A stretch of 64,000 nucleotides of DNA from Octopus sinensis. Lineage: Eukaryota. The position numbers were made by a program, and so were the translations under genes. The stretch spans positions 81,592,001 through 81,656,000 of the forward strand of contig NC_043005.1 in the NCBI RefSeq assembly GCF_006345805.1, given 5' to 3'. The notes below the pieces were generated by a model. It was not told where the DNA came from and made no database searches. It saw only the letters and a list, made by a program, of their open reading frames with translations. Within the stretch, counting starts at the first letter, position 1; the number at the start of each line of letters is the position of its first letter. Shown one piece after another: positions 1-25,451 of this stretch.

Positions 1-24
1 CTCAGGAATAGAAAAAAGTCTTTT

Positions 25-51
25 ACGTTTCGAGCCTACGCTCTTCTACAG
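25..51 (-). ncRNA. Degenerate minimal hammerhead-like motif (Penelope-type terminal repeat remnant)
   Basis: Minus strand reads CTGTAGA-A-GAGC-GTAG-GCTC-GAAAC-GTA: 4-bp stem II with tetraloop, GAAA, palindromic ACGT stem III and GUA triplet. The core is CUGUAGA instead of CUGANGA. Confidence 0.4.
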
Positions 52-1364
52 AAAAGGACACAGAAAAAGCAAGGACAGAAAAAAATGTGTTTAGTGGCTA
101 GCGATCTATCATGGCGACATATATATATATATATGTCCTATATTTATTTCTCGTTCAGGCATTTTCCTTAAGCATGAAGCGAATAGGTCTTCTAAATATC
201 TTATGCCTCTAGTGTAGTTTTAAGAACCATGATACTTATTAGAATTAGATCGACCATAAATGACAAAATACAATCAAAGGAATATTGCCGGTAAATAGTT
301 CAACCTGTTTAGAGCTATACGATAACAGAGGGTCTTTAACAGATTGGTCAGGATCAACTGGAAAACAGGTTAACAAACGCTGCAGTTCTAGACAAGCTAG
401 AAGTTTAAATCAACAAAGCTATCATATTTTGGAATTAGAAAGAACCATATTTCATGTCCAAGATCTTCCTGACAGGAAGTGTGAAGGGAAAGAGAGACAG
501 AGGACTTGAAAGGTGTTTTGGGGCCCGCAATAGCAAAAAATGGAGTGGAAACTACAATTTTCAATGTGTCCTTTTCTTCCTTGACAGAGCAGGGTATTGA
601 GATAATTTAGGTGCTTCTGAGATAACTTAGATGCTACCTCAGTTGAAAACCCCCAAAGGCTTACCCAGTGTTTCGTAAACCATCTCAAATGCGTATATAA
701 AGAGATAATTAGAAGAAATTTAGATGAAAATATTACAGAAATTCCGTAACCATATTGCCTTAATTGTTACCTTAATACCTGGCTAACATTGTGTGCAACC
801 ATGGAGGTAAAAGTGGGGCAGATGCTCTACTAATTGCTCTAAACAGAGTAACCAAGGATGTATTTAATCTAATGTTGCGTCGCCTTGTAATATATTTCAT
901 TTGTTATCAGTGCGTTGTTCATTTCTGTAACAACGAAGACTTGACCTCATATATATACGCACAATATCCAAACACTTGCTCACAGACGTCTAGAAGTAGA
1001 TTTTCCAAGAAGATAGAATCTATTTATGATGGCAAGACACAGCATAATTAGACAGTTAAATACACTGGCGATGACAGGATGTTAACTATCGACTCCTCAG
1101 CAGGTAAACCGGCAATCTATCATCCTGCAGAAATGCAGTAATCGTAAATAGAATACCAGCTGTGAGTATTAAAGAGACTAATAGATTGATACTGAAAGCA
1201 TTATTGGATGTCATGTTGAGAGCTATGACATAGGCTGTTGATAGATTGTTATGACTATGGAACTTGTCAATGGTTCTGTGATTCATTAGACAATTCCGTC
1301 ATAACAACTTTGCTTTTCTTTTGTCGCTATTGCTTCTTGACTTGATAACATGACTCACATTTAC

Positions 1365-1617
1365 AGACACGATAGTGTATGTATGAATATATACATACAT
1401 ACATACATACATACATGTTATATATATGCATTTATATAAATGTGCGTGTGCGTATGTTATATATATAAATATAAACATATATTTATATATATGTATATAT
1501 ATATATACATATATATATGTACATATATATATACATATATATATGCACATATATATATATACACATACATATATATATATACATATATATAAATATACGT
1601 ATATATATATATGCATA

Positions 1618-1670
<53 letters not shown>

Positions 1671-1720
1671 GTATGTATACACACATACATATATGTGTGT
1701 GTGTGTGTTCAATATAGAAT
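1365..1720. repeat. Compound (TACA)n/(TA)n/(TG)n microsatellite
   Basis: Direct reading of sequence; it produces several spurious YI/HT-rich ORFs. Confidence 0.95.
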
Positions 1721-2093
1721 ATGATATATGAAGTTAGTATCGAAAGTAATACAAACGTGGGCATAAGTTTTATATTATTTGACGCAGGTCGTTCGACTTG
1801 CACATGTTGGTAGCGAATCTGTTCGCGTATAGTAAACTCTACGTTCTGTTCTTTTTCATTGCAGGCAAATAACACATTTTAATCAATGTCAACGTAACGG
1901 CAGTGAGTTCTTGAGGGAGAGCAATTTGAGGACTATCCGCTGTCAAGAGAGGGCTACGGATATTTACATAGAATATACCGACAAGAGAAAGTCGTCTAAA
2001 GAAACCTTGTCGGCGCGTTGACAGTCACTGTGGTGCATTATCCGTGCATTAGCCACCACCTGTGGGCTTATGTCGGAGAGCTGCAGTCGCATG

Positions 2094-2663
2094 TATTGGC
2101 TTGTCCGGAAAGTTCATGCCGATTTATAGTAGCTTACATTTCGACTTATTTTAGAACATGGTTGAATCAATAAAATAGGATTTGACTACATCTCCATTTA
2201 GAGCACAGCTTAAGCTATCTTTTCGTGGAAGAAGGTTTATGTTGCTATAACCTGTATTAATTTTGTAACCCTTTAAAATGGAAGATAAGTTCATTTTCGG
2301 CACTTGATGCTTTGGAAACCAGACAAAAATTGCTGCAGCTCGGCTGGGATGTGTTACCCCACCCTCCATATTCACCAGATATTGCTTCTTCGGATTTCCA
2401 CTTATTCTGCAGGTCTCTGCAGAATAGTCTTAATGGTAAAACTTTCAATATCTTGGATGACGTCTAAAGATACTTTGATTAATTTTTTTACCATGAAACC
2501 ACCTCAATTCTAAGAATAGGATATTTTCAAGTTAAGGGAAAAAGGGAGACGCATTGTGTAACACAATTGTTCATATTTAGTTGATTAAAAATGTAATGGC
2601 AAGTATTTATTGACCTTTTTCTTTCCTTTAAATATCGGCACGAACATTCCGGATAACCCAATA
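2094..2663 (+). mobile_element. Internally deleted mariner element (non-autonomous) with both TIRs
   Basis: Left end TATTGGCTTGTCCGGAAAGTTCATGCCG matches the reverse complement of the right end CGGCACGAACATTCCGGATAACCCAATA, with TA at the termini. The interior encodes GWDVLPHPPYSPDIASSDFHLF (mariner YSPDLAPSD motif) followed by stops and frameshifts. Confidence 0.85.
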
Positions 2664-3187
2664 ATTCATCGAATGCACAGTGAGGTTCCCACGCCCCACC
2701 TTTTTTTAACATGGAAAGGAGGCAAAACTTCCTCGGCTTGGTGGAATGAAAGAGGTTCTATGGTGAGTTAATCTGAAGGTTTTGAAGGAGAATATGCCTA
2801 TCTGAACAACGTATTCAAATACGAGTTGAAAAGGAAGATAAGAACAGATAGGGAGGTTCTGATTTCTAGCAAATGAATTGAATGATGGATGAGATTAGGA
2901 GAATTGGTGTGTCTGATTGAGTCTGTCCTATGTGTCCTTTTCTAAGAAAGAGAAAAGAAACTTTGTGCTCCGTTCTTCTAGGGATTGAATTCTTAGTGAA
3001 ATTATATTGGTATTTCGTCTTAAAGTTTTGTTATATCATTTGTTAATGTTCTTGTGATTGATAGAAACCTCACTAATTGTGTATTGCATTCGCTTTTTCA
3101 AGTCGTTGTCAGACTCTACTGGCTACTATCATTATCACGATAAACATTACTATTATCATCCTGATCACCATTATTATCAATAGCACT

Positions 3188-3400
3188 AAGGCGGTGAGGT
3201 GACAGAATCGTTAGCACACCGAACAAAATGCTTAGCGGCATTTCATTCGCATTTACTTTCTGAGATCAAATTTAACCCGGGTCGACTTTGAATTCCATCC
3301 TATCGGGATCGATTAAATAAGTACCAGTTAAACACTGGGATCGATACAATCAACTGAGCCCCATTCTCCAAATTTCAGGTCTTGTGCCTTTAGTAGAAAG
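3188..3400 (+). mobile_element. tRNA-derived SINE, family 1 monomer
   Basis: GGCGGTGAG...GCAGAATCGTTAGCAC head, B-box-like GATCAAATT, and the GTCGACTTTG...AAGTACCAG body shared with many copies in the window. Confidence 0.8.
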
Positions 3401-3401
3401 G

Positions 3402-3440
<39 letters not shown>

Positions 3441-3856
3441 GCAGACTCTCGTAATGTGAGGACATCTTTTATTATTCTCTTTTTCAGAAAATGTCTGTCT
3501 TGAAGTATTACCAAATGGAAATTTCTCCCGAGTAATTGTAAAAAGAACTACAATTGTGGGAGAAGGGCGGTCCTCGATACACATGGCAAACGGCTGCAAG
3601 AACTTTTGTTTCACAAACATGTTAAATAATATTTTAGAATATTATATTTTCACATTGAAAATAGCTACCTCACTTAATTATATGACACAGCAAAGAAGCA
3701 GACGAAGCGAACATCTAAAAGTATTAGAAGAATTAAAAAAAGAATTGGACAGTATAGCGTACAATTGACAGAAGAATATATCCCAAATACTCAAATATTG
3801 AATTCAAATTTTGGCTCAAGGCCAGCAATTTAGGATGAGCTAATAAGTAGATTAGT

Positions 3857-4110
3857 GGAGGCGCGTAGCTTAGTGGTTAGAGTGTCAGCATCATGATCGT
3901 AAGATTGTGGCTTCGATTCCGGGACCGGGCGACGCGTTGTGTTCTTGAGCAAAACGCTTCATTTCACATTGCTCCAGTTCACTCAGCTGGCAAAAATGAG
4001 TAACGCTGCGATGGACTGGTGTCCCATCCAGCTGGGGAACACATACGCCATTGAAACCGGAAAGCCGGGCCCATGAGTCTGGCTAGGCTGTAAAAGGGCG
4101 CATTTATTTT
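3857..4110 (+). mobile_element. tRNA-derived SINE with V-domain-like central motif
   Basis: A-box TAGCTTAGTGG, B-box GCTTCGATTCC, then GCGATGGACTGGTGTCCCATCCAG, which resembles the V-SINE domain. The V-SINE assignment is from recall, not a search. Confidence 0.7.
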
Positions 4111-6016
4111 TAAGATGAGCTAAAGTCGATTAGAACAACCCCAGTGTTCAGTTAGTGTTTATTTTATGGACCCTGAAAGTCGAGCTTCGAACGCGAAGAC
4201 GAACGAAACACCACTAAGCATTATGCCCTCTCGCCACCTTACAAAAACTCAAATATCAAACTGAAAGTCAGTGATTAATAACAACATATGTAGCAATTCT
4301 CCCATAATTCCAAATAATACGGCAGATTTGTTAATAACTTCTATTGCACAATGGGTAACATGTGGAGCAATTAATTACAAAATAAAACTAGCCGAGGTTC
4401 TGATGAGAATCGAGAGGATATACTCAAATCATTCCCATAATTAGATTACTTAATAATTTTAAGCCAGTGCGGACAATATGTGCAGTTGTAGATGGACATG
4501 GCTGTTCAATAGATGGAGAAGTATCCAGTATAGTAACCGTACTGCTGGAGTTGAAATTCCCTTGGCATTACATTCTATTTTCATTAGTGTTAATAATGTT
4601 AAAATCTAAGGCTGACACACTTGCATTTTTAGCCAGAATAAATATTTATACTATGACTCATTCCTATTCTCTAATTCTTTAATGTGTATAGATTTATTAA
4701 TCATAGTGTTTCGGCTCGCGAAGTATGCTGGCGCCTTTTAATATCAACTGTCGATATAACAGATATCTTTAGAAATATTAGTTCAGTTATTCGTTTAAAA
4801 TATGAAACATGTACTGTTCAGTCTCGTAGAACATATACTCTCTAGTCATTTCAAGAGTTGTATTAACGGGTAATCTATCTTCGTTGAAGAGGCTCAATCA
4901 TCATCAGAGTGGACAACGTACACTTAGAGATCAGAATCACATTACGCAGTTTTGTATAACTAATTTTAATTAATTTAAATTCCGAGACTCTTACCCTGTC
5001 ATTCCGACAAGAAATATATGCGCATATAATATAATCTTTTCTTTACTTAATGTGCTGTTTTAATTAATTATCTTTTTATCCATTACATGAGATACGATAA
5101 CATCCATTTCCGGATGGACCACTTGGCTATCAGTCGAATACTACATTGAACCAAAATATACTTATGATTAATCAGTGAGTGAGGAGGAGTAAAGCTGAGA
5201 GATAGTAATCCACATAAATTTTTAAAATTCAGAACTGAGATATTTTTCTCAATTTCTCGAGACGTTTATTATCCTTAGAAGTAGAAGTACATGGTACAGC
5301 AACTTTACGGGCTTTTTCGAGACAAGGTTGAGAAAGTGAGCTTGAGACAAGCAATATGGTCCGTGTGTATGTCTCAATATCATCTCTATAACTGTAATTT
5401 TTATCATCTTTTATGATTCTCAATCTTTGTAACGATCCATGATTTGTTCTTACATATTTTGGAAGCCAGGAATGTATAGGGAATTGTCTAGAAGCAAATT
5501 ACATGAATGCTAGTTTAAGGAAGTTCCTAATTTCAAGAATAAAAGAAGTGAAGAAGGGAAGCGACTATTGTTGAACTCCATACATCCATATAGACCGTAC
5601 AAGATGATGGCTGCAACATGATTTCGAGCATTAAAACAATAATATACGAAAGCGTATATTGTTGTTAAATGCCCGAAATACGAGACTAGAGAAACAGACA
5701 ACAGCTGATGAAGGCTCGTTCTTTATGTTTGTTTTGTTTTCCACTTGTGTCTTTTGTTGTTGGAAAGAATAGTCCATGTTCCATGTGTTCGTGCTTCGTA
5801 CTTTTTTGTTGTACACTTTTCATGACTTCCTGTGCTCACATATACACACATATATATACGTATAGATGTATATACATATACGCATGTATATATGCATATA
5901 TATATAATATATATTATATATATATATATATATATATTATTTATATTACTATATATATATGCATATATATATATATATGAATATAAATATATATATACAT
6001 ATATATATATATTTAT

Positions 6017-6054
<38 letters not shown>

Positions 6055-6092
6055 AATCAGGTACTGGTACTTAAATTAAGAAACCTACTCAT

Positions 6093-6130
<38 letters not shown>

Positions 6131-6783
6131 TATATATATCACACTATTAGAGTATCGACCAGACCATCTGTTGGCGTTATACGCCGCAGTCACATTGTGT
6201 TTCCAATTATATCTTAATTGCACCATTCTTCTCCATTTTGATACAAAATGCTTCACTAGATGTCTTCACATCTATACATACCTACATACACATACATACA
6301 TACATACATACATACATACATACACATACATACATACATACATACATACATACATACATTGATGCGTGTTGAGTGACAAACGTAGTTTTCCGTGTCGGTC
6401 AGATCATGAGCTGAAATTAGACCTGCGGATAACGAGCAGTGGATCTCTTTCTAAAATCGCGGACAAGACTCTTACAGACAATCATGAAAGAACAGTGTAC
6501 ATGTTGCGCCTTTCATTCTGTTTGAAACAACGCAACTTATTTTCGATCAATAAGGAACATCATCATAGCAATATATAAGTATGTCTGATAAACAAATATC
6601 TCTAAGCATTAAAATGATATTATTTTTCGCACTTTTTAGTTCAGTACGAAGCGAATAGTGTACACGTTTATAACAAGAAGATAAATAACTTCGAGAAATA
6701 TAAATCGGAAAATTGCAGGAAGGAAGTTGTAGCGGAAAAACAAGACAGAAGCAAATGGCAGAAGATAAATTCGTGTTGCTTAC

Positions 6784-6981
6784 TTGGACATCAAATGGGA
6801 AATCATTCAACTCCAAGTTCTCCATGAAAGTTCCTTTAATCACCCGTTTCTCAACGATGTAAGCTTCACCTTTATCATTGAAGTTCACTCTGTGCCGTAT
6901 ATTTTCTTTTGGATCACCTAGTGTGTTTTCAATGTAAAGTTTTGGACTCCAGTATTTCTTAATATCAATACCTTCCAGTGC
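6784..6981 (-). CDS. Internal exon of a Cys-less (Pro-loop) pentameric ligand-gated ion channel, extracellular domain
   Basis: Long polypyrimidine tract + TTTACAG acceptor, GTAAGC donor, 198 nt, phase 0/0, open frame ALEGIDIKKYWSPKLYIENTLGDPKENIRHRVNFNDKGEAYIVEKRVIKGTFMENLELNDFPFDVQ. It contains a loop A WxPxLxIxN motif and the FPFD Pro-loop motif. Confidence 0.88.
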
Positions 6982-7202
6982 CTGTAAAGTATAAAAAGAA
7001 AAAAAGAGAAAAAAAGAAAGATATCAGATCAGTAAACAAAATGTTATAAATAAAGAAGCTGAGAAAACAAATGAAAATAAATCGGAATGGTTCGTATTTT
7101 AGTATGACTAATTCTGTATTAGTTTCCATTCTATTTGGTTATACACTGCATTACGCAAACACAGAAACACACGTACGTAAACATATATTAACATACACGT
7201 AA

Positions 7203-7240
<38 letters not shown>

Positions 7241-7632
7241 GCCATAAAAATGTATGCTTAGATATATGTCTTCAAATAGGTATATATGCGTATGTGTATT
7301 TGTGTGAGTATGTGTGTGTGTATGTAGGTATGTACACATATACGCATACATATATATATGTATATATATATTTATATACATATATATACATACATGTATG
7401 CATATATGCATATACACATATACAAATACATATATATATATGTGTGCGTGTGTATTTGTGTGTGTGTGTATTTATGTGTGTGTGTGTGTAAATAGACAAA
7501 CACTCTATACATATATTTGCATAGAGATATATATGGATCTAACTATCTATCTGTCTCCCCCTCTTTGTCTTTCTTTCGCTCGCTATCTCTCTGTACACAC
7601 ACAAACACATATATGCTCCTATACACACACAT

Positions 7633-7699
<67 letters not shown>

Positions 7700-8062
7700 C
7701 ATATATGTACACACAGAGACAGCCACACGAACACACATACGCACAAACACAAACACACATATGCTACTCTGGAACGCATCTAAAAGCAAAATACAGCAAA
7801 AAAAAAAAATATCTATAAATTTTATAGGATTTAGAAATCAAATCACGGAAAGGAAACTGAAGGAATTTCAGTTCAGTAGTTTGATTTAAGTTATTCTTCT
7901 TCTTCCTACGACATCGGAATTGTCTGAAATATGTGTGGTTATTCGGTTCTTGGGCAACAGGCTGTTAACTGAGGAGAAAAAAAACACAGGGAAACGATTT
8001 TTTGTTTCCTTTATTTTATCGTCAAATACGGAATGCCCCCTGGAAATAATCCTGTTGTTTGT

Positions 8063-8139
8063 TTGATGATATGCATACATGTATGTGTGTGTATGTGTAT
8101 ATATATATATATATTTGATGATATGCATACACCTATGTG

Positions 8140-8173
<34 letters not shown>

Positions 8174-8296
8174 CTATAATATATATATATTATATATATA
8201 TATATATTATATATATATATATTTGATGATATGCATACACCTATGTGTATGTATGTATATATATATATTTGAGGATATGCATACACCTATGTGTAT
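8063..8296 (+). repeat. Minisatellite: four copies of TTGATGATATGCATACA(C/T)(C/G)TATGTGT separated by variable (TA)n
   Basis: Cores start at ~8063, 8115, 8223 and 8269. Confidence 0.85.
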
Positions 8297-8410
8297 GTAT
8301 GTATATATATATATATATTTATATACATGTATACATATGTATATATATTATATATATATGTATATACCTATATATATTTACATATATGTAAATATATATG
8401 TTTATATATT

Positions 8411-8456
<46 letters not shown>

Positions 8457-9092
8457 CATGTAAGTATGTATGTACGTGTGTGCATATATATGCGTTTCTG
8501 TGTATGTTTGAATATTTAGGATTACAAAAATAAAATCGTTTATACGACAGACACGCATTTGACCTCAAATCAGTATAAATGTATTTTAGGTGCACTTGAG
8601 ACAGATTACATGCGCATGTGCCCGTGTGTGTTTGTATGTCTGTGCGTGTGTGTATTTGTGTGTATTTGTGTGTGAGCTTTTGTGAGTGAAAATGTGTACC
8701 GACTGTGTTTTGCATCATAGGTTATCTGGAAAATTGAGCAATAATTCTTTGGTACGTATTCGCCGAAGGCTATATGTATGAATGTATGTATGGATGTATG
8801 TATATATTATTGTATGTATGTATTATTATATGTATGTATAAAAATTGATATATATGCATGTATGTATACGCGCAGATATGTATATGGGTATCTATCTATC
8901 TACCTATCTAATTATCAGCATATATAGACGTACCGCACACACACACACGCATACAAACATACATACATAAATACATACATTCATACATACATATATATAT
9001 ATATACACATACATATATATACATACATATACAGACATAGCTACATACACATACATACACATACATACACATACATACATATATACATATAC

Positions 9093-9137
<45 letters not shown>

Positions 9138-9473
9138 ACACACACATTTTATTCTTTTACTTGTCTTAGTCATCTAACTGCGGCTATACTGGGGTAGCGC
9201 CTTTAGTCGAATAAATCGACCCCAAAACTTATTCTTTGTAAGCCCAGTACTTATTCTATCGGATTGCTTTCTGCCGATCCGCTAGCTTATGGGAACGTAA
9301 ACACCAACATTGATTATCAAGCGATGATGGGGGGACAAATACAGACAAAAACAACACACACACACACACACACATAAAAGTAGACATTACGGGTAATTTC
9401 GCCGACTAAAGTCCTTTTGCGACATTGTTTTAGCATGTAGAAACAAATAGGCACTCATACACACACACACGTT

Positions 9474-10062
9474 TATTTCTTTATTGCCCACACGGAGCAA
9501 AGCTTAGAGGAGACAAACAAGGACAGACAAAGGGACTAAGTCGACTACATCGACCCCAGTGCGTAACTGGTACTTATATAATCGACCTCAGAACGTGACG
9601 GCAGAAGAAATACCGCTAAGCCTTTCGCCCGGCATGCTAACGATAATTATTTCTTTACTGCCCACAAGGGGCTACACACAAAGAGGACAAACAAGGACAG
9701 ACAAACGGATTAAGTCGATTATGTCGACCCCAGTGCGTAAATGGTACTTATTTAATCGATCCCGAAAGGATGAAAGGCAAAGTCAAACTGAGCGGAATTT
9801 GAGCTCAGAACGTAGTGGCAGACGAAATACCTATTTCTTTACTATCCACACGGGGCTAAACACAGACTGGACAAACAATGACAGACAAACAAATTAAGTC
9901 GATTATATCGACCCCAGTGCGTAACTGGTACTTATGTAATCGACTCCGAAAGGATGAAAAGCAAAGTCGATCTAGGTGGAATTTGAACTCAGAACGTAGC
10001 GGCAGACGAAATACCTCTAAGCATTTAGCTCGGCGTGCTAACATTTCTGCCAGCTCACCGCC
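9474..10062 (-). mobile_element. SINE family 1 cluster: partial monomer plus dimer
   Basis: Three repeats of the GACAAACAAGGACAGACAAA...ATCGACCCCAGTGCGTAA module, with the head (CCAGCTCACCGCC) at the right end. Confidence 0.85.
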
Positions 10063-11032
10063 CTCACACACATTCACACACATTTTAATATAATATATTG
10101 CAATACTATTTATATATCTTTCAAATCGCGAAAGTACGGGAGATGATAGGACTTTGATATTTGGAGGACGAATCAATATTGACGGATCGATTTTAACATT
10201 CTCAATCACCAACTTAAGGTTTCTGAGAGTTAGCTCGAAACACCCCAGAACAAGCTTATACTAACTTCTCCTTTCATTGAGAGAACTCGCGAGTTGCAAT
10301 TTCTAAAAATATAACACTTGTTTCCATCAATAAACTTAAAACGGATTCACAGAGAAATCGGCCCTTTAACATAACTTGAACTTGGATTTGTGAGATGAGG
10401 CGAGACAAAATACTGTCTGGCATTTATTTAATTTAATACTTATTGTTCCCTGACTCATTATAACAAAGAAATGCTACACTGGATTATAACAATGAAGTCT
10501 ATCCTTGTAGCAATAGGACATAGATTAGTTCCATTACATTCCGAAAATTTCTCATTAAGATCTTATTTATTCAAAATCTAATTTTTCTACCTATTTCACA
10601 GCACTTGACTTATCTAATAACAAAGTCTCTTTGCTACTGGCTCCATCAAATTCTGAACCAAAAAGAGGTAAAAAAAAAAATTACACAAAAGACAAAAAGA
10701 TTTCGATCGTCATAAAGAAAAGCGAGATAAAAATGCAGCACAATTTTCCTAAAATATATATAAATAAAACACATTCAAAGAATAGTAAACGAGATACGGA
10801 ATGAAGAAGAAACAAACTTCTAGCGACTTACTAATGCCAAAGAGACACTGAGAAACTAATTTCTAAAGATTCGATTTCTCAAAGAACTATTACCTTTTCA
10901 GTGTTCTTCAGAATCCAATCGATTTTACGAAGTGTCTCTCAGTGTAACTGCCCTCTGACACATATGTGTATGTATATGTAGAGATATGTATGTACATTCC
11001 TTGCGACATATCCTATTTCTTCCCATATCCAT

Positions 11033-11064
<32 letters not shown>

Positions 11065-11566
11065 CATACATACAAACATGGTACGTAGTTACAAAACACA
11101 CACACATACGCACAAACATGCACACACAAGGAGACAGAGGTGCATACATATATAAACACATGCTCACACACACACATAGAAAATACACAAACACGGACAT
11201 GCAACCACATGTATATGCAGAATACATACATACATATATACATATGCATACACACACACACATGCATACACACATGCATACGTACTTGTATGCATGCATA
11301 GGCACACACACACACTATCCCACACACATGCGCACAAACAAACAAAAAGGAACGCAGTGTAAATAACGTCAGAGTCAAGACTATTGAAAAGGTTGCAAGA
11401 CGCAACGAAAATTTAAGAAAATAAAAATAAGAAATAAGTGAAAATTTTACCGGTAAGTGCGTTACGTTATAAGGTACAAGAAGAAATTGACTCTCCCCAG
11501 ACACAACAGAATATGCTTCAACACACGAACTCATATAAAGAATCTTGCAAACCAAATCCAAAAACG

Positions 11567-11606
<40 letters not shown>

Positions 11607-12436
11607 GTACAGGTATACATTCTTACACACATATACATATACTTGTATATGCATATATAAACATGCACGTATTGATGTGTTTTGCATGCAAAATACATGA
11701 TACGCTTGAATGTATATACACCTTATATTTAATGACATTTTTAAATGAAATCAAGCTGTATATGTTCGTTTCAAATATTGGCTTCAAATATTGGAATAAG
11801 GCCAGCCATTTCGGAGAAGGAGGATTCGTCAATTATATCGACCCCAATACTCAGCTGGTACTTACTTTATCTACACCAAAAGGATGAAAGGCAAAGTGGA
11901 CTTCGGTGGAATTTGAACTCAGACCTTACAGACGGACGGAATGCCACTAAGTATTTTGTACGGTAGCGTTAACGTTTCTGCCACCTACGCCTTGCAAGAA
12001 GTATATATTAATATCGATGCATACATAATCTATATAAGTTTTCAGGACATGAATTGAGGTTTGTAATGGAGGCGGGAAGACAAATTATATATACCCATCA
12101 GACTAACATCAACAAATATAGAGAAAGCAGTACCTGGTAGGATTTTTAAATCCTTCGTCACGCTAATTAGAATCAATATCGAGGGAGATACTCACGAATT
12201 AAAGCGCGACCCTAAATATTGGGTTCAATGCCAGTAGGTTTGGCAAGAGGGGAAAGTCGATTATGTTGACCCCCGTGCTCAAGTGTTAGTTATTTTATCG
12301 ACCCCGGAAAGATGAAAAGTAAATTCGACATTGGTGGAGTTTGAACACAGAACCTAAGGACATACAAAATGCCACCAAGCACTTTCACCGACATGCTAAC
12401 GATCCCGCTAGCTCGCCGTCCTTTATTACATAGATA

Positions 12437-12798
12437 TTCTTTTCTACTCTAGGCACAAGGTCCGACAATTTGGGGGAGGGGGCCGGTCGATTAGATCAAT
12501 CCAAGTACGGAACCAGTACTTAATTTATCGACCCCGAAATGAGGAAACGCAAAGTCGACCTCAGCGGAATTTGAACTCAGAACATAAAAGACAGACGAAA
12601 TACCTATTTCTTTACTACCCACAAGAGGCTAAACACAGAAGGGACAAACAAGGGCGTAACTGGTACTTATTTAATCGACCCCGAAAGGATGAAAGGCAAA
12701 GTCGACCTCGGCGGAGTTTGAACTCAGAACCTAACGGCAGACGAAATACCGCTAAGCATTTCACCTGGTGTGCTAACGTTTCTGCCAGCTCACCACCC
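12437..12798 (-). mobile_element. SINE family 1 dimer
   Basis: Head at 12750-12798, internal junction AATACCTATT at 12599, alternative terminal tail at the left. Confidence 0.8.
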
Positions 12799-12814
12799 TC
12801 TCATTACATAAATA

Positions 12815-13387
12815 TTCATTTGTTTATTGCATCAGGCGGTTAAACATAGAGGGGGCAAACAAGGACAGACAAAGGGATTAAGTCGATTACATCGACCCCA
12901 GTGAGTAACTGGTGTTTATTTAATCGACGCCGAAACGATGAGAGGTAAAACCGACCTCGGCGTAAAAACATACGAAATACCTATTTCTTTACTACCCACA
13001 ACAGAGAGAGGACAAACAAGGACAGACACACGGATTAAGTCAATTATATCGACCCCAGTGCGTAACTGGTACTTATTTAATCGACCACGAAAGGTTGAAA
13101 GGCAAAGTCGACCTCGGCGGAATTTGAACTCAGAACATTAGCGGCAGACGAAATACCTATTTCTTTACTACCCACAAGGGGCTACACACAGAGGGACAAG
13201 CAAGGACGGACAAACGGATTAAGTCGATTATATCGACCCCAGTGCGTAACTGGTACTTATTCAATCGGCCCCGAAAGGATGACAGACAAAGACGACCTCG
13301 GCGGAATTTGAACTCAGAACGTAGCGGCAGATGAAATACCGCTAAGCATTTCGCCCGGCGTGCTAACGTTTCTGCCAGCTCGCCGCT
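12815..13387 (-). mobile_element. SINE family 1 trimer
   Basis: One head (13340-13387) and three body/tail modules, with junctions at 12976 and 13152 (176-bp spacing). Confidence 0.85.
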
Positions 13388-14111
13388 CTTTCATTACATA
13401 AGTATTGATAATACCATTCTCCACCTTTAGATTTTCGTTTCAAATCTTAAAACTAATAAATAATAGCAATAGAATATACAGAATATCGAATATGTAACAT
13501 AATACGGAATATATAATACATTATAGAATATAGAAAACATAGATCCTAAGTTTGACGAGAAAATTTTTGCATCTTTGTCGTACAAAGTTTTCAAACGAAA
13601 CATGGGATCGATATATCAGCGTTTTGGAACAATATAATGGATTCTGATATTAGGTACATGGAAGCCGGTGAGCTGGCAGAATCGTTAGCACGCTGGGTAG
13701 ATTTCTTGGTGGCATTTCGTCTGTCTTTACATTCTGAGTTCAAATACCACCGAGGTCGACTTTGATTTTCACCCTTTTCAGAGATGGTGGGGAAAATGCT
13801 TCGGTCGATATAATCGACTTATACACTTCCTCGAAATTGCTGGCCTTCTGCCAAAATTTGAAAACTATATTAGGTACACGGGCAGCACTATTGAAGGTTT
13901 GGAATTAATGGATACAATGGAATCCACTTCGTAACTAATACCACATTTTATCGACAGCAAAATGATGAAAGGCAAATTCGACCTCAGCGAAATTAAAACT
14001 CCTCAGAATGTGAATCTTTGTGTGTGTCTGTCTCTCTCTTTATTTATATATATATATATTAAAGAGAGAGACAGACACAACACACACACACATACACACA
14101 CACACACATAT

Positions 14112-14142
<31 letters not shown>

Positions 14143-14164
14143 TCCCACCCAACTAATCCCCCCC

Positions 14165-14225
<61 letters not shown>

Positions 14226-15399
14226 CTGTAAGAAGAATTTAAGATAAGTATTTATTTATCGGTTGCTTCTTGTTTGGGATTTCATGATGAATCTCCTTTT
14301 CTCAAAATATAAAATCTGTACACCACTTCAAGCAATCTACGCACACACGTACACACACACATAAGCGCACACACACACACACACACACACACACGCATAG
14401 ACGTGTTTGTGTGTATGTAGAAAGAGAGAGTGTGTGAGAGAGAGATTGCGTGTCTACACGCATTCGAACGCATTGTCTCAGTTTTTATTTCTCTAACTCA
14501 AGCTACAGTCTACTAAGCTACGACGGTGTAATTCCTCTAAAGAACCATCGCACACCCTGTGTCTAGATATTTTTGTAATGCTGTGGTTCATAACGTTTCT
14601 ACCATATTTATTAAAATCGTTTTGATGTGAAAACGACATATTGCAAGAACTGACTTAGCACTGAAATTAGTTTCTACAGAATTTTCTCATTTATTTCTAC
14701 TAGTTTCTGATTTCAAAGACATTTAAATTTCACATTACCTTTTATTCAACAAATGCTTTTCCTATGTTCAACTATAATGTTCATATCGGTTCCAAAGGTT
14801 ACATATTATCTATGAATACATTAGGCATGCTTTTATTTAGGAGACATGACTACGGTCACTTTTGTTCAAATCTGCTTGAGTAGTCATAAAGTGAATTCAT
14901 TGCTAAACGGATGAAGATTATCAACATAAAGGTACTGCCCACTAGATATACGCAAAGATAATCCACACGACTGGATCTCATTTCCGCTTGAGTTGACTTT
15001 AAGGAAATGGAAAATAAATTTCCTTAATAAGAAAACGGTCTATTGCAGCAAAGTTTTCGTGTGGGAGTAAAGTAAATACACATTAGGAATCAACGTATGG
15101 CTTATCAAGTTTACATTTCTGATACTGTTTTCGGTAGCAAAGAAACGTACAAGTGTGTTTAACGCTGACAAGGCTGAGTGCTACAGTCACCAGAATACGG
15201 GATCAACGTAATGTCAGTTATACAACGCAAAACCCATTTGTTCTTAAATAGAATGTTGCGGCGCAATGGTGCGCCGGAAGTGCTACTTAAGTGAATCGCA
15301 TATATTTTTCTGCCTCTAAATAGAATTTAAATTTAAGAAAATCCATACAATTACTCATGCGCCTACAGTCATAATATACGCTAGCATACAATATTGTAT

Positions 15400-15600
15400 T
15401 TACGATTCCCGGACAGTGCTGTGTGCTGTGTTCTTGAGCAAGACACTTTATTTCCCGTTGTTCCAGTTCAGTCAGCTGTAGAAATTATTTACGACGTCAC
15501 TGGTCCCAAGTTGTATTGGACTTTGTCTTTCCCTTGGATAACATCGGTGGCATAGAGAGGGGAGAATGTTATGAATGGGCGACAACAGGTTTTCCATATT
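15400..15600 (+). mobile_element. 5' part of a SINE interrupted by a LINE
   Basis: TGTGTTCTTGAGCAAGACACTTTATTTC...GGATAACATCGGTGGC...GGGCGAC. It appears to continue at 16667-16750 (TTGCTCGGACTTG...CGTGACCGAAAGGGGTCTTTAACCTTTACC); the continuity is from my recall of the family. Confidence 0.6.
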
Positions 15601-16666
15601 GTACGATGGGATGGTGCCTTCCTCTCAGATCGCTCCTTCCAAGTCCAAGTTAATGGTTCGCGGTCCGACGTCTCCAGTGCGAGCAGTGGCGTGCCTCAAG
15701 GTTCAGTGCTTGGGCCCTTATTGTTCTTGGTCTTCATAAATGACTTGCCCGACGACCTCACGCAACACACCCTTCTATTTGCCGACGATGTCAAACTGGT
15801 CGCTCCTCGCGGTGATATAGAGGATCTTCGTCGATGCCTCCACCAAATTTGGAGATGGTCTAACGAATGGGACCTGTGTCTGAACGTGTCAAAGTGCTGT
15901 CATCTGCCTGTTGGCTCTCCTCCTGCAACTCAACTTGATTTCGAGCCGGGTCGGCTGCTGCTGGAGAGGACCGATCAGGTAAAGGACCTGGGTATCTTGG
16001 TGGATTCCTCCTTTTCGCCTTCGGCCCAGTGCGTCCATGCTGCCAACAAAGCACGCGGAGTTCTGTTCATGATTCGACGGTCATTCGGAATGCCCACAGC
16101 AGCCATATTCCTACCGCTCTATGTCACGCTGGTGAGACCCATATTGGAGTACGGGATTCAAGCCTCTTCTCCTTATATCCTCAAAGACATACAGCATCTC
16201 GAAAGAGTCCAGAACCTGGCTACCCGCAATGTTCTTGGTCTCAAAAAATTGTCTTATGAAGAAAGGCTTAAGACGCTCGACCTTTATTCTCTAGAAAAAC
16301 GACGACGCCGTAGAGATCTCATTCTTGCTCACAACATCATAAGCGGAAAGTGTAACCTCTCGAAAGAGCTGTTCTTCGCTCCTGCTCCAGAGCGTCGGCT
16401 GCGGGGTCCTTCCGGAAAGCTCTATCTGCGACGATTTCATCTCAATCGAAGGAGAGGGGCTTTCTCCGTCCGGGTTGCGGATCCGTGGAATAAGCTGCCG
16501 GACTAGATGGGGAAGATGCCGACGACCGCTCGGTTCAAAGTCTCCCTTAACCTCAAGTGTCCTGAACTCTTTACATGAACACCACACTGTACATAACTCC
16601 ATGTCCCCCTACATGGCCTTGCTTTTTGCTTTTTGAGCCAAAAAATTAACTAACTAACTAACTAAC
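15601..16666 (+). mobile_element. 5'-truncated CR1-like LINE, reverse transcriptase C-terminal half
   Basis: ORF contains SGVPQGSVLGPLLF, FADD, DLGI and RPILEY. A single TAG at 16504-16506 precedes a short in-frame continuation. The element ends in a (TAAC)5 tail at 16647-16666. Confidence 0.92.
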
Positions 16667-18326
16667 TTGCTCGGACTTGAGCCTCGGAGTGACACTTTGT
16701 ACATGCAATCCCCTTGTCATTCGTGACCGAAAGGGGTCTTTAACCTTTACCCGAGCTTACGAATTTTTTTTTCTGAGGATTCGATTTTAAAGCATATTAT
16801 GTGTTGAAATACCCATGCAAAATGTTAGTTTTGTTTTACTGCCCATATGAAGGGCGCCAGTGTAGCTTTACTTTCTCTGTAGTACCATATGGAGTCAAAA
16901 CTATTTTAAAACACTACACTAGTAATTCAATACTGATTATAGTTAAGAAGAGGAAAGGACTTTTAAAAATTGTGGGATACGTTTCTATTATATTAACCAA
17001 TTTATGAAACACCGAAATTAATTTATGCTTACTTAATTACAATACAATATGAGTGCTATACAATATTATTGCTACACAATATAGGAAAATAATGATTTTC
17101 TACAAATTCCATATAATATTCAATATATTATATAGTAGTGGGATTTTTAGAGTTATATCAACTCTGTTGAGGCAGACATCGATTAAGTGTGATTCAGCCT
17201 TGACCATCCTATGGTATGTTCTATCTAGAGTGCTCTGTTTTTCTCATGATTAATAATAAAGAAAAAAATTCCAGGATATGAAGAGGATATCGTGACTGAA
17301 AGATCATTCGTAGTTGTGACCAAATATTTAATTATTACGGTTTACAAACAAGTGAGATAACGAAGTTCTTAAATTTCAAATCGTAGAAAAGAATAAAATT
17401 GTTGTGTAATTAGTAACAAAAAAAAATGATTTTAATAATTGACTTGGTTGATTTCAGACGAAACGTTTATCAATAGGAGCCTTATACTTCCGAATATTAC
17501 GGTTGCAAATTTTTCCAGAATTATTCTCACACTTAGTATCTAACATAGCTTTAAAATTTTGTTACTTAATCCGCAACAGGATGTCAGTGGTTTTAATATT
17601 TCTCTCGGTAATTTATAGAAGAAATGAAACTAAAATAAAAAGCAAATATTGAATGACTATTAGAAGCCTCTAAAGAAACATACAGAAGTAGCATTTGTTT
17701 GTATTCTCCACAACTTTGTTTTCAAAATTAAAAATTAAAAACATATATTTTTTAAAGTGATTAAATATTTCCAAATATGCTTTTAAAACCTGTCAGAAAT
17801 AATTTTACTTGCAATCGTATTTTATTATTAAAAGGTCATTTATATCTTGACAAAGAATTCGAAAAATTTTCCGTGTAATTTAAATTCGGAAATATTTCAA
17901 TTAGAATTTTGGAAGTACACAAAGAATTATCATTAATATTATTCCATTAATATGAATAACGACGAAGAATATTCCAGAATTTCTAATCTGATCTTATTTC
18001 AATTTTGTCATTCGCCTACACTATCCATCTTTCATATGAGACTTTTGCTCATTATCTTCGTTAGATCTGGACAAGCAGAAATTCTAATTATGTCAATGCT
18101 TAATAAATAACTTATACGCTCTCCTAAATTTCATACATGGCAGACTACGGCAATATTTTATGACTAATAAACACTTTGTTGAAGGTATAAGACAAGGTGG
18201 ATGAGATGTTCGCTTCCTAACTCATTCGATGTCGATTACTTCAATGCAGATGCTCACGCGCGCGCACACACACAAAAACATACACACACACATTACTATT
18301 CATTTTTATTTCAAGCTATATATAAT

Positions 18327-18760
18327 AGGCGCGTGAGTGGCTGCGTGGTAAGCATAGGCGCAGGAGTGGTTGTGTGTTCAGTAGCTTGCTTAGCAACCAC
18401 ATGGTTCCGGGTTCAGTCCTACTGCGTGACAAATTGGGCAAGTGTCTTCTGCTATAGCCTCGGGCCAACCAAAGTCTTGTGAGTGGATTTGGTAGACGGA
18501 AACTGAAAGAAGCCCGTCGTATATATGTATATGTATGTGCGTATATATGTTTGTGTGTCTGTTCCCCCAACATCGCCTGACAACCGACGCTTGTGTGTTT
18601 ACGTCCCCGTAACTTAGCGGTTCGGCAAAAGAGACCGATAGAACAAATACTAGGCTTACAATGAATAAGTCTTTGGGTCAATTTTCTCGACTACAGGCGT
18701 AGCTCCAACAAGGCCACAGTCAAATGACTGAAAGAGTAAAATGTAAAAGAGTAAAGAGTA
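18327..18760 (+). mobile_element. tRNA-derived SINE family 2 (duplicated head)
   Basis: AGGCGC..GAGTGG.TG.GTG head occurs twice, then GGTTCCGGGTTCAGTCC, GAAAGAAGCCCGTCGTATAT, a central microsatellite, and an (AAAGAGT)n-like tail. Confidence 0.85.
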
Positions 18761-19429
18761 TAAAAGCAAATTAGCATTAATCTGAAGTATTACTCTATAT
18801 TTTTTAGTTGAGTGCATATTTAATAAATTTTTATAAGAAGGTTGGCTGCGAGCGCAAAGTTTCGACTTGCTAACTTTTGTCAGACTGTGAGCGTGTTAAT
18901 ATATGTATATATATATGTGTGCGTGTATGTGTACCTGTGAGTATGTGAATGTGTATTTATCTATCTATCTATCGTATATATATTCATATGCACAAGCACA
19001 CACATGTATATAACATTTAAAGTCAACAAAGTTGAGTACATTTGGACTTAACACTGAGATGTGGAAACATCTGCGCTGCGCTGTCTCGGTAGAGAAATTC
19101 TTTTCAGATGCAATGTCTCGATGAAAAGAATTTCTCTTCGCATTCATCTGCGCAGCGAATGCCTTTCCTCGTTTCGGTGTACATGAAACCGTTATGTAAA
19201 CAAATTTATTGTAATCACTACTGATTATCGTTTCCCAAATTCCTGTTTAACAAAGCCTTGAAGAAGCCAGAAAAGAATTATTATTTGCTGGTTGGCGTAT
19301 ATCCTACCAGCAACGGAAGAATTTTGTTGGCTGTGAAATGGATATAGTATTTACCAACTTCTTAGCCACGTAGCCAAGACTGCGTTGGTTATGTGACAAC
19401 AGCCACATTTCTCATGTCCTTTGGTTATA

Positions 19430-20882: not shown

Positions 20883-21289
20883 GGATCTTTTCGGTTTGAA
20901 CGGCAGTTTTTAGCATAATTTCTAGGTAACTAAAAAATGTTAAACTTCTTATACTGGTAGAATGTGTTTATAAAACGTCTTTTTCTCTTGGCTTTATTGA
21001 GAAAATTCTATAGTTTGTAAGATATTTGTTGTTTTTTTCTTCAATTTCTGCAATTTCAACCAATCAATGACGTCCATTGAGGTAAACAACCTTCTGTGCC
21101 GTATGAATATGTCCCTCGTTTAAGAAACAAATTGGGTTTATTACATTTGTGAAGGGAAAAGTTACCCTTCCCCCACCCCTAACCGTAAAACAGATTGAAA
21201 TGCAATAGATCGATACTAGGGTCATAATTATGGGTGACAATTTCATATGCTACCGCTAGAAAAAACTGCCGTTCAAACCGAAAAGATCC
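20883..21289. mobile_element. MITE with ~28-bp TIRs
   Basis: GGATCTTTTCGGTTTGAACGGCAGTTTTT ... AAAAACTGCCGTTCAAACCGAAAAGATCC. Confidence 0.9.
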
Positions 21290-25448: not shown

Positions 25449-25451
25449 TAT

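What the first reader, a model, noticed from the sequence alone, without database searches (positions are those of the whole stretch)
6784..6981. Exon of a Cys-less Pro-loop pentameric ligand-gated ion channel (orphan receptor)
Seen: a clean 198-nt phase 0/0 exon encoding YWSPKLYIENT (loop A) and MENLELNDFPFDVQ. Established: Cys-loop receptors have C-x6-F/Y-P-x-D-x-Q-x-C, and the FPxD proline is the family-wide invariant. Cys-less members occur in prokaryotes, protists and some invertebrates and are mostly uncharacterised. Here the position seven residues before the Phe is Glu, not Cys. Inference: this is a metazoan Cys-less channel of unknown ligand and selectivity, distinct from nAChR-derived cephalopod chemotactile receptors. 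In a probable cephalopod it is a candidate novel neural or sensory channel.
Basis: partly seen in the sequence, partly recalled or inferred. Interest (0 to 1): 0.8.

Follow-up and report, generated by a model that had tools for sequence, protein, structure and literature searches.

The report
Octopus Cys-less ion-channel gene exon
The 198-base stretch is a real, strongly conserved exon of an octopus gene for a bacterial-type (ELIC-like) pentameric ion-channel subunit that lacks the usual cysteine bridge; the gene is already annotated in public octopus genomes and its family is already catalogued, but nobody knows what opens the channel.

Summary
Window 6784-6981 (minus strand) is a 66-codon, phase 0/0 exon with AG/GT borders. 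It is 100% identical to residues 71-136 of the RefSeq proteins 'cys-loop ligand-gated ion channel-like' of Octopus bimaculoides, O. sinensis, O. vulgaris and Argonauta.

Selection on it is extreme. Against two more distant cephalopod copies there are 38-40 synonymous differences and 1 non-synonymous.

The full octopus protein hits PF02931 and PF02932. Its model folds as a pLGIC subunit (TM-score 0.70-0.75 to GlyR and GABA-A chains). The oyster orthologue's closest solved relative by sequence is bacterial ELIC. The first Cys-loop position is Glu and the second, in the next exon, is Leu.

The O. sinensis gene spans 538 kb. The window therefore holds only this exon and a 42-nt alternative cassette exon at 26560-26601.

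The oyster and Capitella orthologues are in the 2016 'Pro-loop receptor' inventory, and the ligand is still unknown.

One oddity is unreported in the papers searched. Across phyla the family lacks a signal peptide and has a conserved polybasic tail after M4. This raises the possibility that the 'extracellular' domain faces the cytoplasm.

The parts
6784..6981 (-). Constitutive coding exon, 198 nt, phase 0/0. It encodes residues A71-Q136 of XP_052827029.1. Contents: two short helical turns, loop A (W-S-P...Y-I-E-N), the beta-hairpin that carries loop E (with the invariant E-K-R), and the first two thirds of the Pro-loop (GTFMENLELNDFPFDVQ).
   Evidence: sequence, splice sites. (100% identity to four octopod proteins). 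(38-40 synonymous vs 1 non-synonymous difference). (conservation stops at both borders). (invariant residues, secondary structure of the model).
26560..26601 (-). Alternative 42-nt cassette exon, phase 0/0, encoding LGGKTGEEHLCTRE. It is inserted between ...DGQTHT and ALEGID... in O. sinensis isoforms X1, X2, X3, X6 and X7, in the stretch between the second beta-strand and loop A.
   Evidence: 14/14 identity to P0052. (ttctttctttttaacgtttag|TTGGGC...AGAGAG|gtgggt). (isoform sequences with and without the insert).
6982..6990 (-). Nine bases (ACT TTA CAG = TLQ) immediately upstream of the exon. They are present in some annotated isoforms (O. bimaculoides X1, X3, X4; O. sinensis X4). The window has no AG in front of them (tat|act), so how they get included is unclear.
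6991..26559 (-). Intron between the cassette exon and the 198-nt exon, about 19.6 kb. It is filled with microsatellites, SINE-like repeats and a LINE reverse-transcriptase fragment.
   Evidence: Profile HMMs of the other exons found none of them here.
26602..64000 (-). Part of the intron upstream of the cassette exon. The beta1-beta2 exon (VRVQIVVQFAKVGEIDTLKEQ...) is not within it.
   Evidence: no match. (the O. sinensis gene spans 538 kb).
1..6783 (-). Start of the downstream intron. The next exon (DLTVTVASELPSYEV...RRPGYFVWNIFMVT) is not within it.

Best explanation
The feature is an internal coding exon of the octopus gene annotated as 'cys-loop ligand-gated ion channel-like' (O. sinensis XP_036361944.1-XP_036361949.1 and XP_029640855.1; O. 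bimaculoides XP_052827028.1-XP_052827031.1).

[quoted passage not shown] It belongs to the prokaryote-like 'Cys-less' clade, which is conserved across Lophotrochozoa. The subunit has a beta-sandwich ligand-binding domain without the Cys-loop disulfide, four helices M1-M4, a very short M3-M4 loop (as in ELIC and GLIC) and a basic C-terminal tail.

The exon supplies three things:
- loop A of the principal face of the binding pocket;
- the beta-hairpin that carries loop E of the complementary face;
- most of the Pro-loop, which in all pLGICs couples ligand binding to the M2-M3 loop and so to pore opening.

Inferred, not shown: five subunits assemble around an M2-lined pore (6' Thr, invariant 9' Leu) and open on binding a small conserved ligand. 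Ligand and ion selectivity are unknown. The -1' residue is Asn and -2' is Gln, so the pore matches neither the cationic GEK signature nor the anionic PAR signature.

A 42-nt cassette exon 19.6 kb upstream gives isoforms with 14 extra residues in the stretch between the second beta-strand and loop A.
For: Identity and integrity of the exon:
- 100% identical to four octopod proteins.
- Contigs of 1.8-3.0 kb from public sequencing-run assemblies carry the exon joined in one ORF to its neighbours (P0046, P0047 and cluster members).
- pN 0.006 against saturated pS.

Family:
- Three concatenated exons of a compact orthologue (L002) reach PF02931 at 35.2 bits against a cut-off of 26.
- The oyster orthologue gives PF02931 at 34.6 bits and PF02932 at E 6e-5. 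Its best PDB hit is ELIC, E 1.5e-19.
- The database's precomputed Pfam domains for the octopus proteins are PF02931 and PF02932.
- The AlphaFold model of XP_052827029.1 has pLDDT 82.9 and pTM 0.75, with a beta-sandwich and four helices. Foldseek matches it to GlyR and GABA-A chains at E about 1e-19, TM-score 0.70-0.75 (normalised to the target) over more than 320 columns.

Conserved residues: P83, N89, G120, E124, E127, L128, F131, P132, D134 and Q136 of the exon are invariant in 73 family members, as are R243 (0') and L252 (9') of M2.

Gene size: 538 kb in O. sinensis, which explains why no other constitutive exon is in the window.
Against: - The exon alone gives no Pfam hit and no significant PDB hit, even as a 27-sequence profile. 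Its stand-alone model is poor, pLDDT 61.6. Family membership therefore rests on the rest of the gene, which lies outside the window.
- No functional data exist for any member of this orthologue group. Pentamer formation, gating and conductance are inferred from homology.
- PF02932 is below its curated cut-off in my scan of the oyster and L006 orthologues (23.8-24.7 bits against 28.1).
- The absence of a signal peptide and the charge distribution do not fit a canonical surface receptor with an extracellular binding domain.
Confidence: 0.88

Rival explanations
1. Same gene and fold, but inverted in the membrane. With no signal peptide, M1 would insert as an N-cytoplasmic signal anchor. The ligand-binding domain, the M2-M3 loop and the basic C-terminal tail would then all face the cytoplasm. 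The channel would be gated by an intracellular ligand, at the plasma membrane or in an organelle. The missing Cys-loop disulfide would fit a reducing compartment.
For: - In about 95 family members from molluscs, nemerteans, a brachiopod, annelids, flatworms and rotifers, the N-terminal region before beta1 is 20-190 residues long and hydrophilic. Its best 12-residue Kyte-Doolittle window is mostly below 1.6. The set includes ORFs from short sequencing-run contigs that look like transcripts.
- Lys+Arg on the binding-domain side (pre-M1, M2-M3 loop, post-M4) averages 14.3, against 2.5 on the other side. The binding-domain side is higher in 72 of 73 sequences.
- A motif [PA]-C-[KR]-[KR]-R-R-x-M-x-x-K-D-x-E-Y directly after M4 is conserved across phyla.
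- The M3-M4 loop is about 11 residues and net acidic.
- General rules: positive-inside, and 89% of N-cytoplasmic multipass proteins have an even number of TM segments (PMC13220792).
- No paper in the held library discusses this.
Against: - To my knowledge every characterised pLGIC has an extracellular or periplasmic binding domain.
- Basic residues before M1 are normal in the superfamily.
- From my own knowledge, a post-M4 helix lying on the binding-domain side has a precedent in the alpha7 nAChR 'latch'. The model here predicts the post-M4 stretch as a confident helix.
- My signal-peptide test is a crude hydropathy scan, not SignalP or DeepTMHMM.
- A few members do have a hydrophobic N-terminal stretch (P0088, P0094, P0114).
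- Gene models can miss 5' exons.
Confidence: 0.3
2. The main product is a soluble, binding-domain-only protein, analogous to the molluscan acetylcholine-binding protein, rather than a channel.
For: One O. vulgaris model (CAI9729320.1, isoform X3, 238 aa) diverges after ...ADATVRR and ends before M1.
Against: - All other octopod isoforms, and all orthologues in other phyla, keep M1-M4 with an invariant 9' Leu and a near-invariant M2.
- The TM exons are the best conserved parts of the gene.
- There is no signal peptide for secretion.
Confidence: 0.04
3. An isolated pseudo-exon or decaying relic with no function in this genome.
For: Only one constitutive exon is detectable in 64 kb. The neighbours are absent within 57 kb upstream and 6.8 kb downstream.
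Against: - 38-40 synonymous against 1 non-synonymous change, and conserved splice sites, versus distant cephalopods.
- 100% protein identity among four octopods.
- The O. sinensis gene spans 538 kb.
- A second, alternative exon of the same gene lies in the window with intact splice sites.
Confidence: 0.02
4. A member of the cephalopod chemotactile or other nAChR-derived sensory receptor expansions.
For: It comes from a cephalopod and belongs to the same superfamily.
Against: - The oyster orthologue's best solved relative by sequence is ELIC, then GABA-A gamma2 and GlyR; no nAChR chain is among the 60 best listed.
- Only one matching locus came back per species for the loci I fetched.
- It shows 61-84% identity between the aligned orthologues across molluscan classes and further phyla, and extreme purifying selection. 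That is the opposite of fast-evolving, lineage-specific chemoreceptors.
- It is intron-rich, whereas chemotactile receptor genes are described as intronless (PMC13174522).
Confidence: 0.01

Closest known systems
RefSeq 'cys-loop ligand-gated ion channel-like' of Octopus sinensis (XP_036361944.1-XP_036361949.1, XP_029640855.1), O. bimaculoides (XP_052827028.1-XP_052827031.1), O. vulgaris (CAI9729320.1) and Argonauta hians
   Same: The window exon is 100% identical to residues 71-136 of XP_052827029.1. The 42-nt cassette exon is 100% identical to the insert of O. sinensis isoforms X1, X2, X3, X6 and X7. This is the same gene.
   Different: Nothing at the protein level. The window shows no AG acceptor for the annotated 'TLQ' isoforms.
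Metazoan 'Cys-less Pro-loop receptors' of Jaiteh, Taly & Henin 2016 (PMC4795631), e.g. Crassostrea gigas K1QX27 and Capitella teleta R7UUZ4
   Same: - Orthologous: 67.6% identity over the exon, and 76% between the octopus protein P0045 and K1QX27 residues 8-319 over 99% of that query.
- Same Glu/Leu replacement of the two cysteines.
- Same M2 (QNRLQLSFTLVLTAVAFK), short M3-M4 loop and exon borders.
   Different: That paper lists bivalves and gastropods, not cephalopods, and gives no function. It does not discuss signal peptides or topology.
ELIC, the Erwinia (Dickeya) ligand-gated ion channel (PDB 2VL0, 2YN6, 8D67 and others)
   Same: - Closest solved relative by sequence, E 1.5e-19 over residues 3-265 of the oyster orthologue.
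- No Cys-loop disulfide, and a polar residue at the first Cys position.
- Pro-loop GSFSNDMDFRLFPFDRQ against GTFMENLELNDFPFDVQ.
- M2 RLQTSFTLMLTVVAY against RLQLSFTLVLTAVAF.
- Short M3-M4 loop.
   Different: - ELIC is bacterial and periplasm-facing, and from my own knowledge it is made with a signal peptide.
- ELIC has Glu at -1' and, from my own knowledge, is cation-selective and opened by primary amines. The octopus protein has Asn at -1'.
- The octopus protein has hydrophilic N- and C-terminal extensions and Tyr/Glu instead of Glu/Ile at the loop A positions aligned with ELIC 77/79 (numbering counted from the alignment).
Flatworm 'Cys-less' LGICs (Schistosoma Smp_336620, Smp_334630, Smp_135040; planarian gabrg1 and gabrg2), PMC9874803
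   Same: Flatworm relatives (Sparganum, Schistosoma, Paragonimus) are hit at 48-52% identity with the same architecture. Sparganum keeps the post-M4 CKRRR motif. I did not show that these hits are the named Smp genes. PMC9874803 places the schistosome channels in the same Cys-less clade.
   Different: - The schistosome channels have Glu at -2' (PMC9874803); octopus has Gln.
- The planarian genes are reported in mechanosensory neurons, with a seizure-like RNAi phenotype (Ross 2018, as cited). There are no such data for molluscs.
Cys-loop receptors in the strict sense (nAChR, 5-HT3, GABA-A, GlyR), including the cephalopod chemotactile receptors
   Same: Same fold (Foldseek TM-score 0.70-0.75). 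Same W-x-P...N loop A motif, F-P-x-D-x-Q Pro-loop, pre-M1 Arg, and 6' Thr and 9' Leu.
   Different: - No Cys-x13-Cys disulfide.
- No large M3-M4 intracellular domain.
- No signal peptide detected.
- The model shows strands from residue 28 with no helix before them, so no N-terminal helix.
- Sequence identity is only 16-19%.

Membership tests
Pentameric ligand-gated ion channel (Pro-loop) superfamily | Ligand-binding domain homologous to PF02931, above Pfam's gathering score | tested here: met
   The exon alone gives no hit. Three concatenated exons of orthologue L002 score 35.2 bits against 26. The oyster orthologue scores 34.6 bits. The octopus proteins that contain the exon at 100% identity carry precomputed PF02931.
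Pentameric ligand-gated ion channel (Pro-loop) superfamily | Invariant proline in the F/Y-P-x-D motif of the beta6-beta7 loop | tested here: met
   FPFD is at exon residues 61-64. F131, P132 and D134 are invariant in 73 family members, and the motif aligns with ELIC FPFD.
Pentameric ligand-gated ion channel (Pro-loop) superfamily | Four transmembrane helices after the binding domain, with M2 carrying 9' Leu | tested here: met
   These are not in the window. In the octopus protein the model gives helices 212-234, 240-264, 270-298 and 302 onward. L252 (9') is invariant. PF02932 is at E 6e-5 but below the curated cut-off in my scan of the oyster orthologue, and it is precomputed for the octopus proteins.
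Pentameric ligand-gated ion channel (Pro-loop) superfamily | Subunit fold: beta-sandwich on a four-helix bundle | tested here: met
   The AlphaFold model has pLDDT 82.9. Foldseek against the PDB gives E about 1e-19 and TM-score 0.70-0.75 to GlyR and GABA-A chains over more than 320 columns.
Pentameric ligand-gated ion channel (Pro-loop) superfamily | Assembles as a pentamer and conducts ions when a ligand binds | not testable with these tools
   I found no functional data for this orthologue group in the held literature.
Cys-loop receptors in the strict sense | Two cysteines 13 residues apart flanking the F-P-x-D loop, forming a disulfide | tested here: not met
   The first position (7 residues before the Phe) is Glu in the window. 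The second is Leu in the next exon of the octopus protein (FPFDVQ-D-L). The exon has no Cys.
Metazoan Cys-less Pro-loop clade (Jaiteh et al. 2016) | Orthology to the catalogued lophotrochozoan Cys-less sequences, with polar and hydrophobic residues at the two Cys positions | tested here: met
   K1QX27 and R7UUZ4 were found in the paper's alignment by the DFPFD motif. tblastn of K1QX27 against the window gives 67.6% identity, E 1e-30. K1QX27 was retrieved as P0037 in the profile search. No phylogenetic tree was built here.
Cephalopod chemotactile receptors (nAChR-derived) | nAChR-clade sequence, intronless genes, lineage-specific expansion | tested here: not met
   The oyster orthologue's best solved relative by sequence is ELIC; no nAChR chain is among the 60 best listed. 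The gene has introns and spans 538 kb. It is conserved at 61-84% across molluscan classes and further phyla. The properties of chemotactile receptors are taken from PMC13174522.
Acetylcholine-binding proteins (soluble binding-domain pentamers) | Secreted binding domain without transmembrane helices | tested here: not met
   M1-M4 are present in all but one annotated isoform. No signal peptide was detected.

The most novel reading that the evidence does not exclude
This conserved lophotrochozoan family, including the octopus gene, may be a pentameric ligand-gated channel mounted upside down. Its members lack a signal peptide, carry hydrophilic N-terminal extensions, have a short acidic M3-M4 loop, and have a conserved Cys-polybasic tail after M4. 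On that reading the 'extracellular' ligand-binding domain sits in the cytoplasm and senses an intracellular ligand. That would also explain why the Cys-loop disulfide is dispensable. As far as I know, no pLGIC with this orientation has been described.
Probability: 0.3. Interest if true: 0.85.

Novelty: already known. Interest (0 to 1): 0.33.

Why it matters
As a sequence feature it adds nothing new. The exon belongs to an annotated octopus gene whose family was inventoried in 2016.

The family itself is still a blank. It is an ELIC-like channel kept at 61-84% identity across the aligned orthologues from molluscan classes and further phyla, under very strong purifying selection. It is absent from vertebrates, Drosophila and C. 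elegans (PMC9874803, PMC4795631). No ligand, selectivity or cellular site is known.

Such conservation points to a conserved endogenous ligand rather than an environmental chemoreceptor.

If the topology signals noted here mean what they usually mean, the family would be the first pLGIC gated from the inside. That would change how the superfamily's evolution and the role of the Cys-loop disulfide are understood. Flatworm relatives have also been proposed as anthelmintic targets.

Tried and rejected
- **Exon alone.** The 66-aa peptide gave nothing against Pfam or the PDB. A 27-sequence profile of it gave only GlyR alpha3 at E 1.7, in the right region but not significant. AlphaFold on the exon alone gave pLDDT 61.6, so I did not use it for a fold search.
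- **First homologue search.** The 66-aa query returned only 27 short single-exon fragments. I briefly concluded that the database lacked annotated eukaryotic proteins. The later profile search of seven multi-exon sequences (A2) showed that was wrong and returned the RefSeq octopus proteins.
- **Other exons in the window.** I tried tblastn with L002 exons, with K1QX27, with per-exon profile HMMs on all six frames and with the octopus proteins. Only the cassette exon turned up.
- **Near relative L001.** It shares only this exon with the window within +/-10 kb.
- **Source organisms of run and assembly accessions.** Looking for SRR11869390, ERR12921338, SRR29346471, ERZ21867824 and ERZ25069866 in the papers gave nothing.
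- **O. sinensis locus DNA.** It could not be fetched because the gene range is too long. Isoform X2 is not on record.
- **Rfam on the whole window.** No hits.
- **Rejected readings.** Pseudo-exon, rejected on selection and annotation. Chemotactile or nAChR-type receptor, rejected on relatives and gene structure. The 'Cys-less clade' of the MolluscaGenes preprint may or may not be this family, because it is defined there by loss of the YxCC motif.

Full report
**1. The observation**

Read on the minus strand, window 6981->6784 is preceded by a polypyrimidine tract and AG (tttctttttatactttacag|GCACTG...). It is followed by a consensus donor (...GTCCAA|gtaagc). It translates without a stop to ALEGIDIKKYWSPKLYIENTLGDPKENIRHRVNFNDKGEAYIVEKRVIKGTFMENLELNDFPFDVQ. 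Both quoted motifs are present. The residue seven positions before the Phe of FPFD is Glu, and the exon has no cysteine. The plus strand carries only 45-49 aa ORFs. The exon is a unique island between microsatellite-like tracts.

**2. Is it more than chance?**

A search of the large protein collection found 27 short fragments at 73-100% identity, with E down to 4e-37. These are gene calls on genomic contigs of other species that run into intron sequence. In the alignment, similarity ends exactly at ...FPFDVQ|V and at the acceptor. The exon borders are therefore conserved across species.

I fetched five of those contigs.
- One (L005) differs from the window exon by two synonymous changes, while its introns are only about 80% identical.
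- Two (L001, L003) match the window only over the exon and about five flanking bases at each end. They differ by 38-40 synonymous and 1 non-synonymous change, so pS is saturated and pN is 0.006. Their AG and GTAAG sites are intact.

This rules out a decaying pseudo-exon.

**3. What family?**

The exon alone is too short. It gives no Pfam hit and no PDB hit. A 27-sequence profile reaches only GlyR alpha3 at E 1.7. Its stand-alone AlphaFold model is poor.

A compact orthologous locus (L002) showed a flanking exon on each side. The three exons joined hit PF02931 at 35.2 bits (cut-off 26). In the PDB their best match is bacterial ELIC, followed by DEG-3 and 5-HT3A.

The supplementary alignment of Jaiteh, Taly & Henin 2016 (PMC4795631) contains two clear orthologues, oyster K1QX27 and Capitella R7UUZ4. 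That paper lists them among metazoan 'Cys-less Pro-loop receptors'. K1QX27 matches the window only at this exon, at 67.6% identity and E 1e-30. Its best solved relative is ELIC at E 1.5e-19, and the M2 helices are nearly superimposable in sequence.

**4. The gene itself**

A profile of seven multi-exon orthologues (A2) retrieved 658 proteins. Among them are RefSeq models named 'cys-loop ligand-gated ion channel-like' from Octopus bimaculoides, O. sinensis, O. vulgaris and Argonauta hians.

- The window exon is 100% identical to residues 71-136 of XP_052827029.1 and to the other three octopod proteins.
- Contigs of 1.8-3.0 kb from public sequencing-run assemblies carry the exon in one ORF with its neighbours. 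Some of them carry the GEAF variant also seen in L001 and L003.
- The next residues in the protein are D-L-T-V, so the second Cys-loop position is Leu.
- The 14-residue insert LGGKTGEEHLCTRE of several O. sinensis isoforms is encoded at window 26560-26601 (minus strand), with tttag|...|gtgggt borders. This is a 42-nt cassette exon 19.6 kb upstream.
- No other exon is in the window, by tblastn or by per-exon HMMs.
- That absence is expected, because the O. sinensis gene spans 538 kb.
- The rest of the window is intron. It holds two LINE reverse-transcriptase remnants, some 34 fragments of a SINE-like repeat, and a 2.4 kb TA tract. There are no Rfam hits.

**5. Structure and mechanism**

An AlphaFold model of the octopus protein, built from 73 homologues, has pLDDT 82.9 and pTM 0.75. 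It shows a beta-sandwich followed by four helices. Foldseek matches it to GlyR and GABA-A subunits at E about 1e-19 and TM-score 0.70-0.75 over more than 320 columns.

In the model the exon covers:
- two short helical turns;
- loop A (W81-S-P83...Y86-I-E88-N89);
- a long beta-hairpin (90-104 and 110-123) that carries the loop E positions, including the near-invariant E114 and R116;
- the Pro-loop up to Q136.

P83, N89, G120, E124, E127, L128, F131, P132, D134 and Q136 are invariant across 73 family members.

By homology the exon contributes to both faces of the agonist pocket and to the element that transmits binding to the M2-M3 loop. The pore has 6' Thr and an invariant 9' Leu. Its entrance reads P-Q-N-R, which matches neither the cationic nor the anionic signature, so selectivity is open. 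Pentamer formation and gating are inferred, not shown.

**6. Comparison with what is known**

The gene is annotated, and its family is catalogued (PMC4795631). Related flatworm 'Cys-less' channels are discussed in PMC9874803. That paper cites planarian homologues in mechanosensory neurons with a seizure-like RNAi phenotype.

It is not a Cys-loop receptor in the strict sense, because the disulfide positions fail the test. It is not a chemotactile receptor, which the literature describes as nAChR-derived and intronless. I found no ligand for any member. The finding is therefore correct but already known.

**7. An unexpected family trait**

While reading the orthologues I saw that none has an evident signal peptide.
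- The region before beta1 is 20-190 residues long, hydrophilic and often rich in Lys, Arg and Ser. Many molluscs share the N-terminal motif M-[AST]-[ST]-[VI]-A-Y-[NS]-F-M.
- After M4 comes a conserved Cys-polybasic motif, (P/A)-C-(K/R)-(K/R)-R-R-x-M-x-x-K-D-x-E-Y, followed by a 20-130 residue tail.
- The M3-M4 loop is about 11 residues and net acidic.
- Lys+Arg averages 14.3 on the binding-domain side against 2.5 on the other. The binding-domain side is higher in 72 of 73 sequences.

By the positive-inside rule, and because N-cytoplasmic multipass proteins usually have an even number of helices (PMC13220792), these are the marks of an N-in/C-in protein. The 'extracellular' domain would then be cytoplasmic, and a disulfide would be out of place there. 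No paper in the library mentions this.

The caveats are real. My hydropathy scan is crude. Pre-M1 arginines are normal in the superfamily. A post-M4 helix on the binding-domain side has, from my own knowledge, a precedent in alpha7 nAChR. I put this reading at about 0.3.

**8. Verdict**

- Observation: confirmed.
- Interpretation: supported.
- Novelty of the feature as found: none, because it is an annotated gene in a catalogued family.
- Residual interest: the family is still an orphan, and the topology question is simple to test.

Noticed in passing
window 36001-38400: A tract of about 2.4 kb of imperfect (TA)n with scattered TTCA/TATT interruptions. GC is about 3% (0.029 in the 36001-38000 bin).
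   Followed up: partly
window 15556-16503 (+), 34866-35177 (+), 35475-35906 (+): Open frames of non-LTR retrotransposon remnants. The first two hit PF00078 reverse transcriptase (54.5 and 45.5 bits). The third has no Pfam hit but lies directly downstream of the second. All sit inside the introns of the channel gene, on the opposite strand.
   Followed up: partly
window 3203-3355, 9474-10068, 11828-13777, 22107-24643, 39088-39304, 46346-46763, 50386-50546, 54471-55110, 57920-58361: About 34 full or partial copies (70-93% identity) of a roughly 250-bp SINE-like repeat, often in head-to-tail clusters and on both strands. No tRNA-type or other Rfam hit was found in the window.
   Followed up: partly
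window 6982-6990 (-); L005 262-270: Some RefSeq isoforms insert TLQ exactly where the nine bases upstream of the exon read ACT TTA CAG. But the window has TAT, not AG, in front of them, and the related species L005 has tat|ACTGTGCAG. The explanation could be a non-canonical acceptor, an annotation artefact or a sequence difference in the annotated genomes. This is not resolved.
   Followed up: partly
L010 4320-4514 and 5512-5679: A likely bivalve orthologue (81.5% identical to oyster K1QX27 over the exon) has two tandem copies of the exon encoding M1 and M2. One reads ...KPENRLQLSLTLILTAITFK..., the other ...KPENRLQLSFTLVLTAVAFK.... This looks like a pair of mutually exclusive exons that would change the pore lining.
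   Followed up: no
P0104 (O. vulgaris CAI9729320.1): An annotated 238-aa isoform leaves the common sequence after ...ADATVRR and ends before M1. If real, the product would be a binding domain with no membrane part.
   Followed up: no
Family-wide (P0028-P0163); octopus residues 1-27 and 331-418 of XP_052827029.1: There is no signal peptide. The N-terminal motif M-x-S-V-A-Y-N-F-M is conserved in many molluscs. The post-M4 motif C-K-K-R-R-x-M-x-Q-K-D-K-E-Y is conserved across phyla. C-terminal ends such as -SKY, -SKL and -SKF resemble PDZ ligands. Together these point to cytoplasmic termini.
   Followed up: partly
P0057 (Littorina saxatilis), oyster K1QX27, O. sinensis isoforms: The phase-0 junction just upstream of the 198-nt exon is a recurrent site of extra sequence: 14 residues in octopus, about 10 in the UniProt oyster model and about 35 in Littorina. 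This suggests a conserved hot spot of alternative splicing in the stretch between the second beta-strand and loop A.
   Followed up: no
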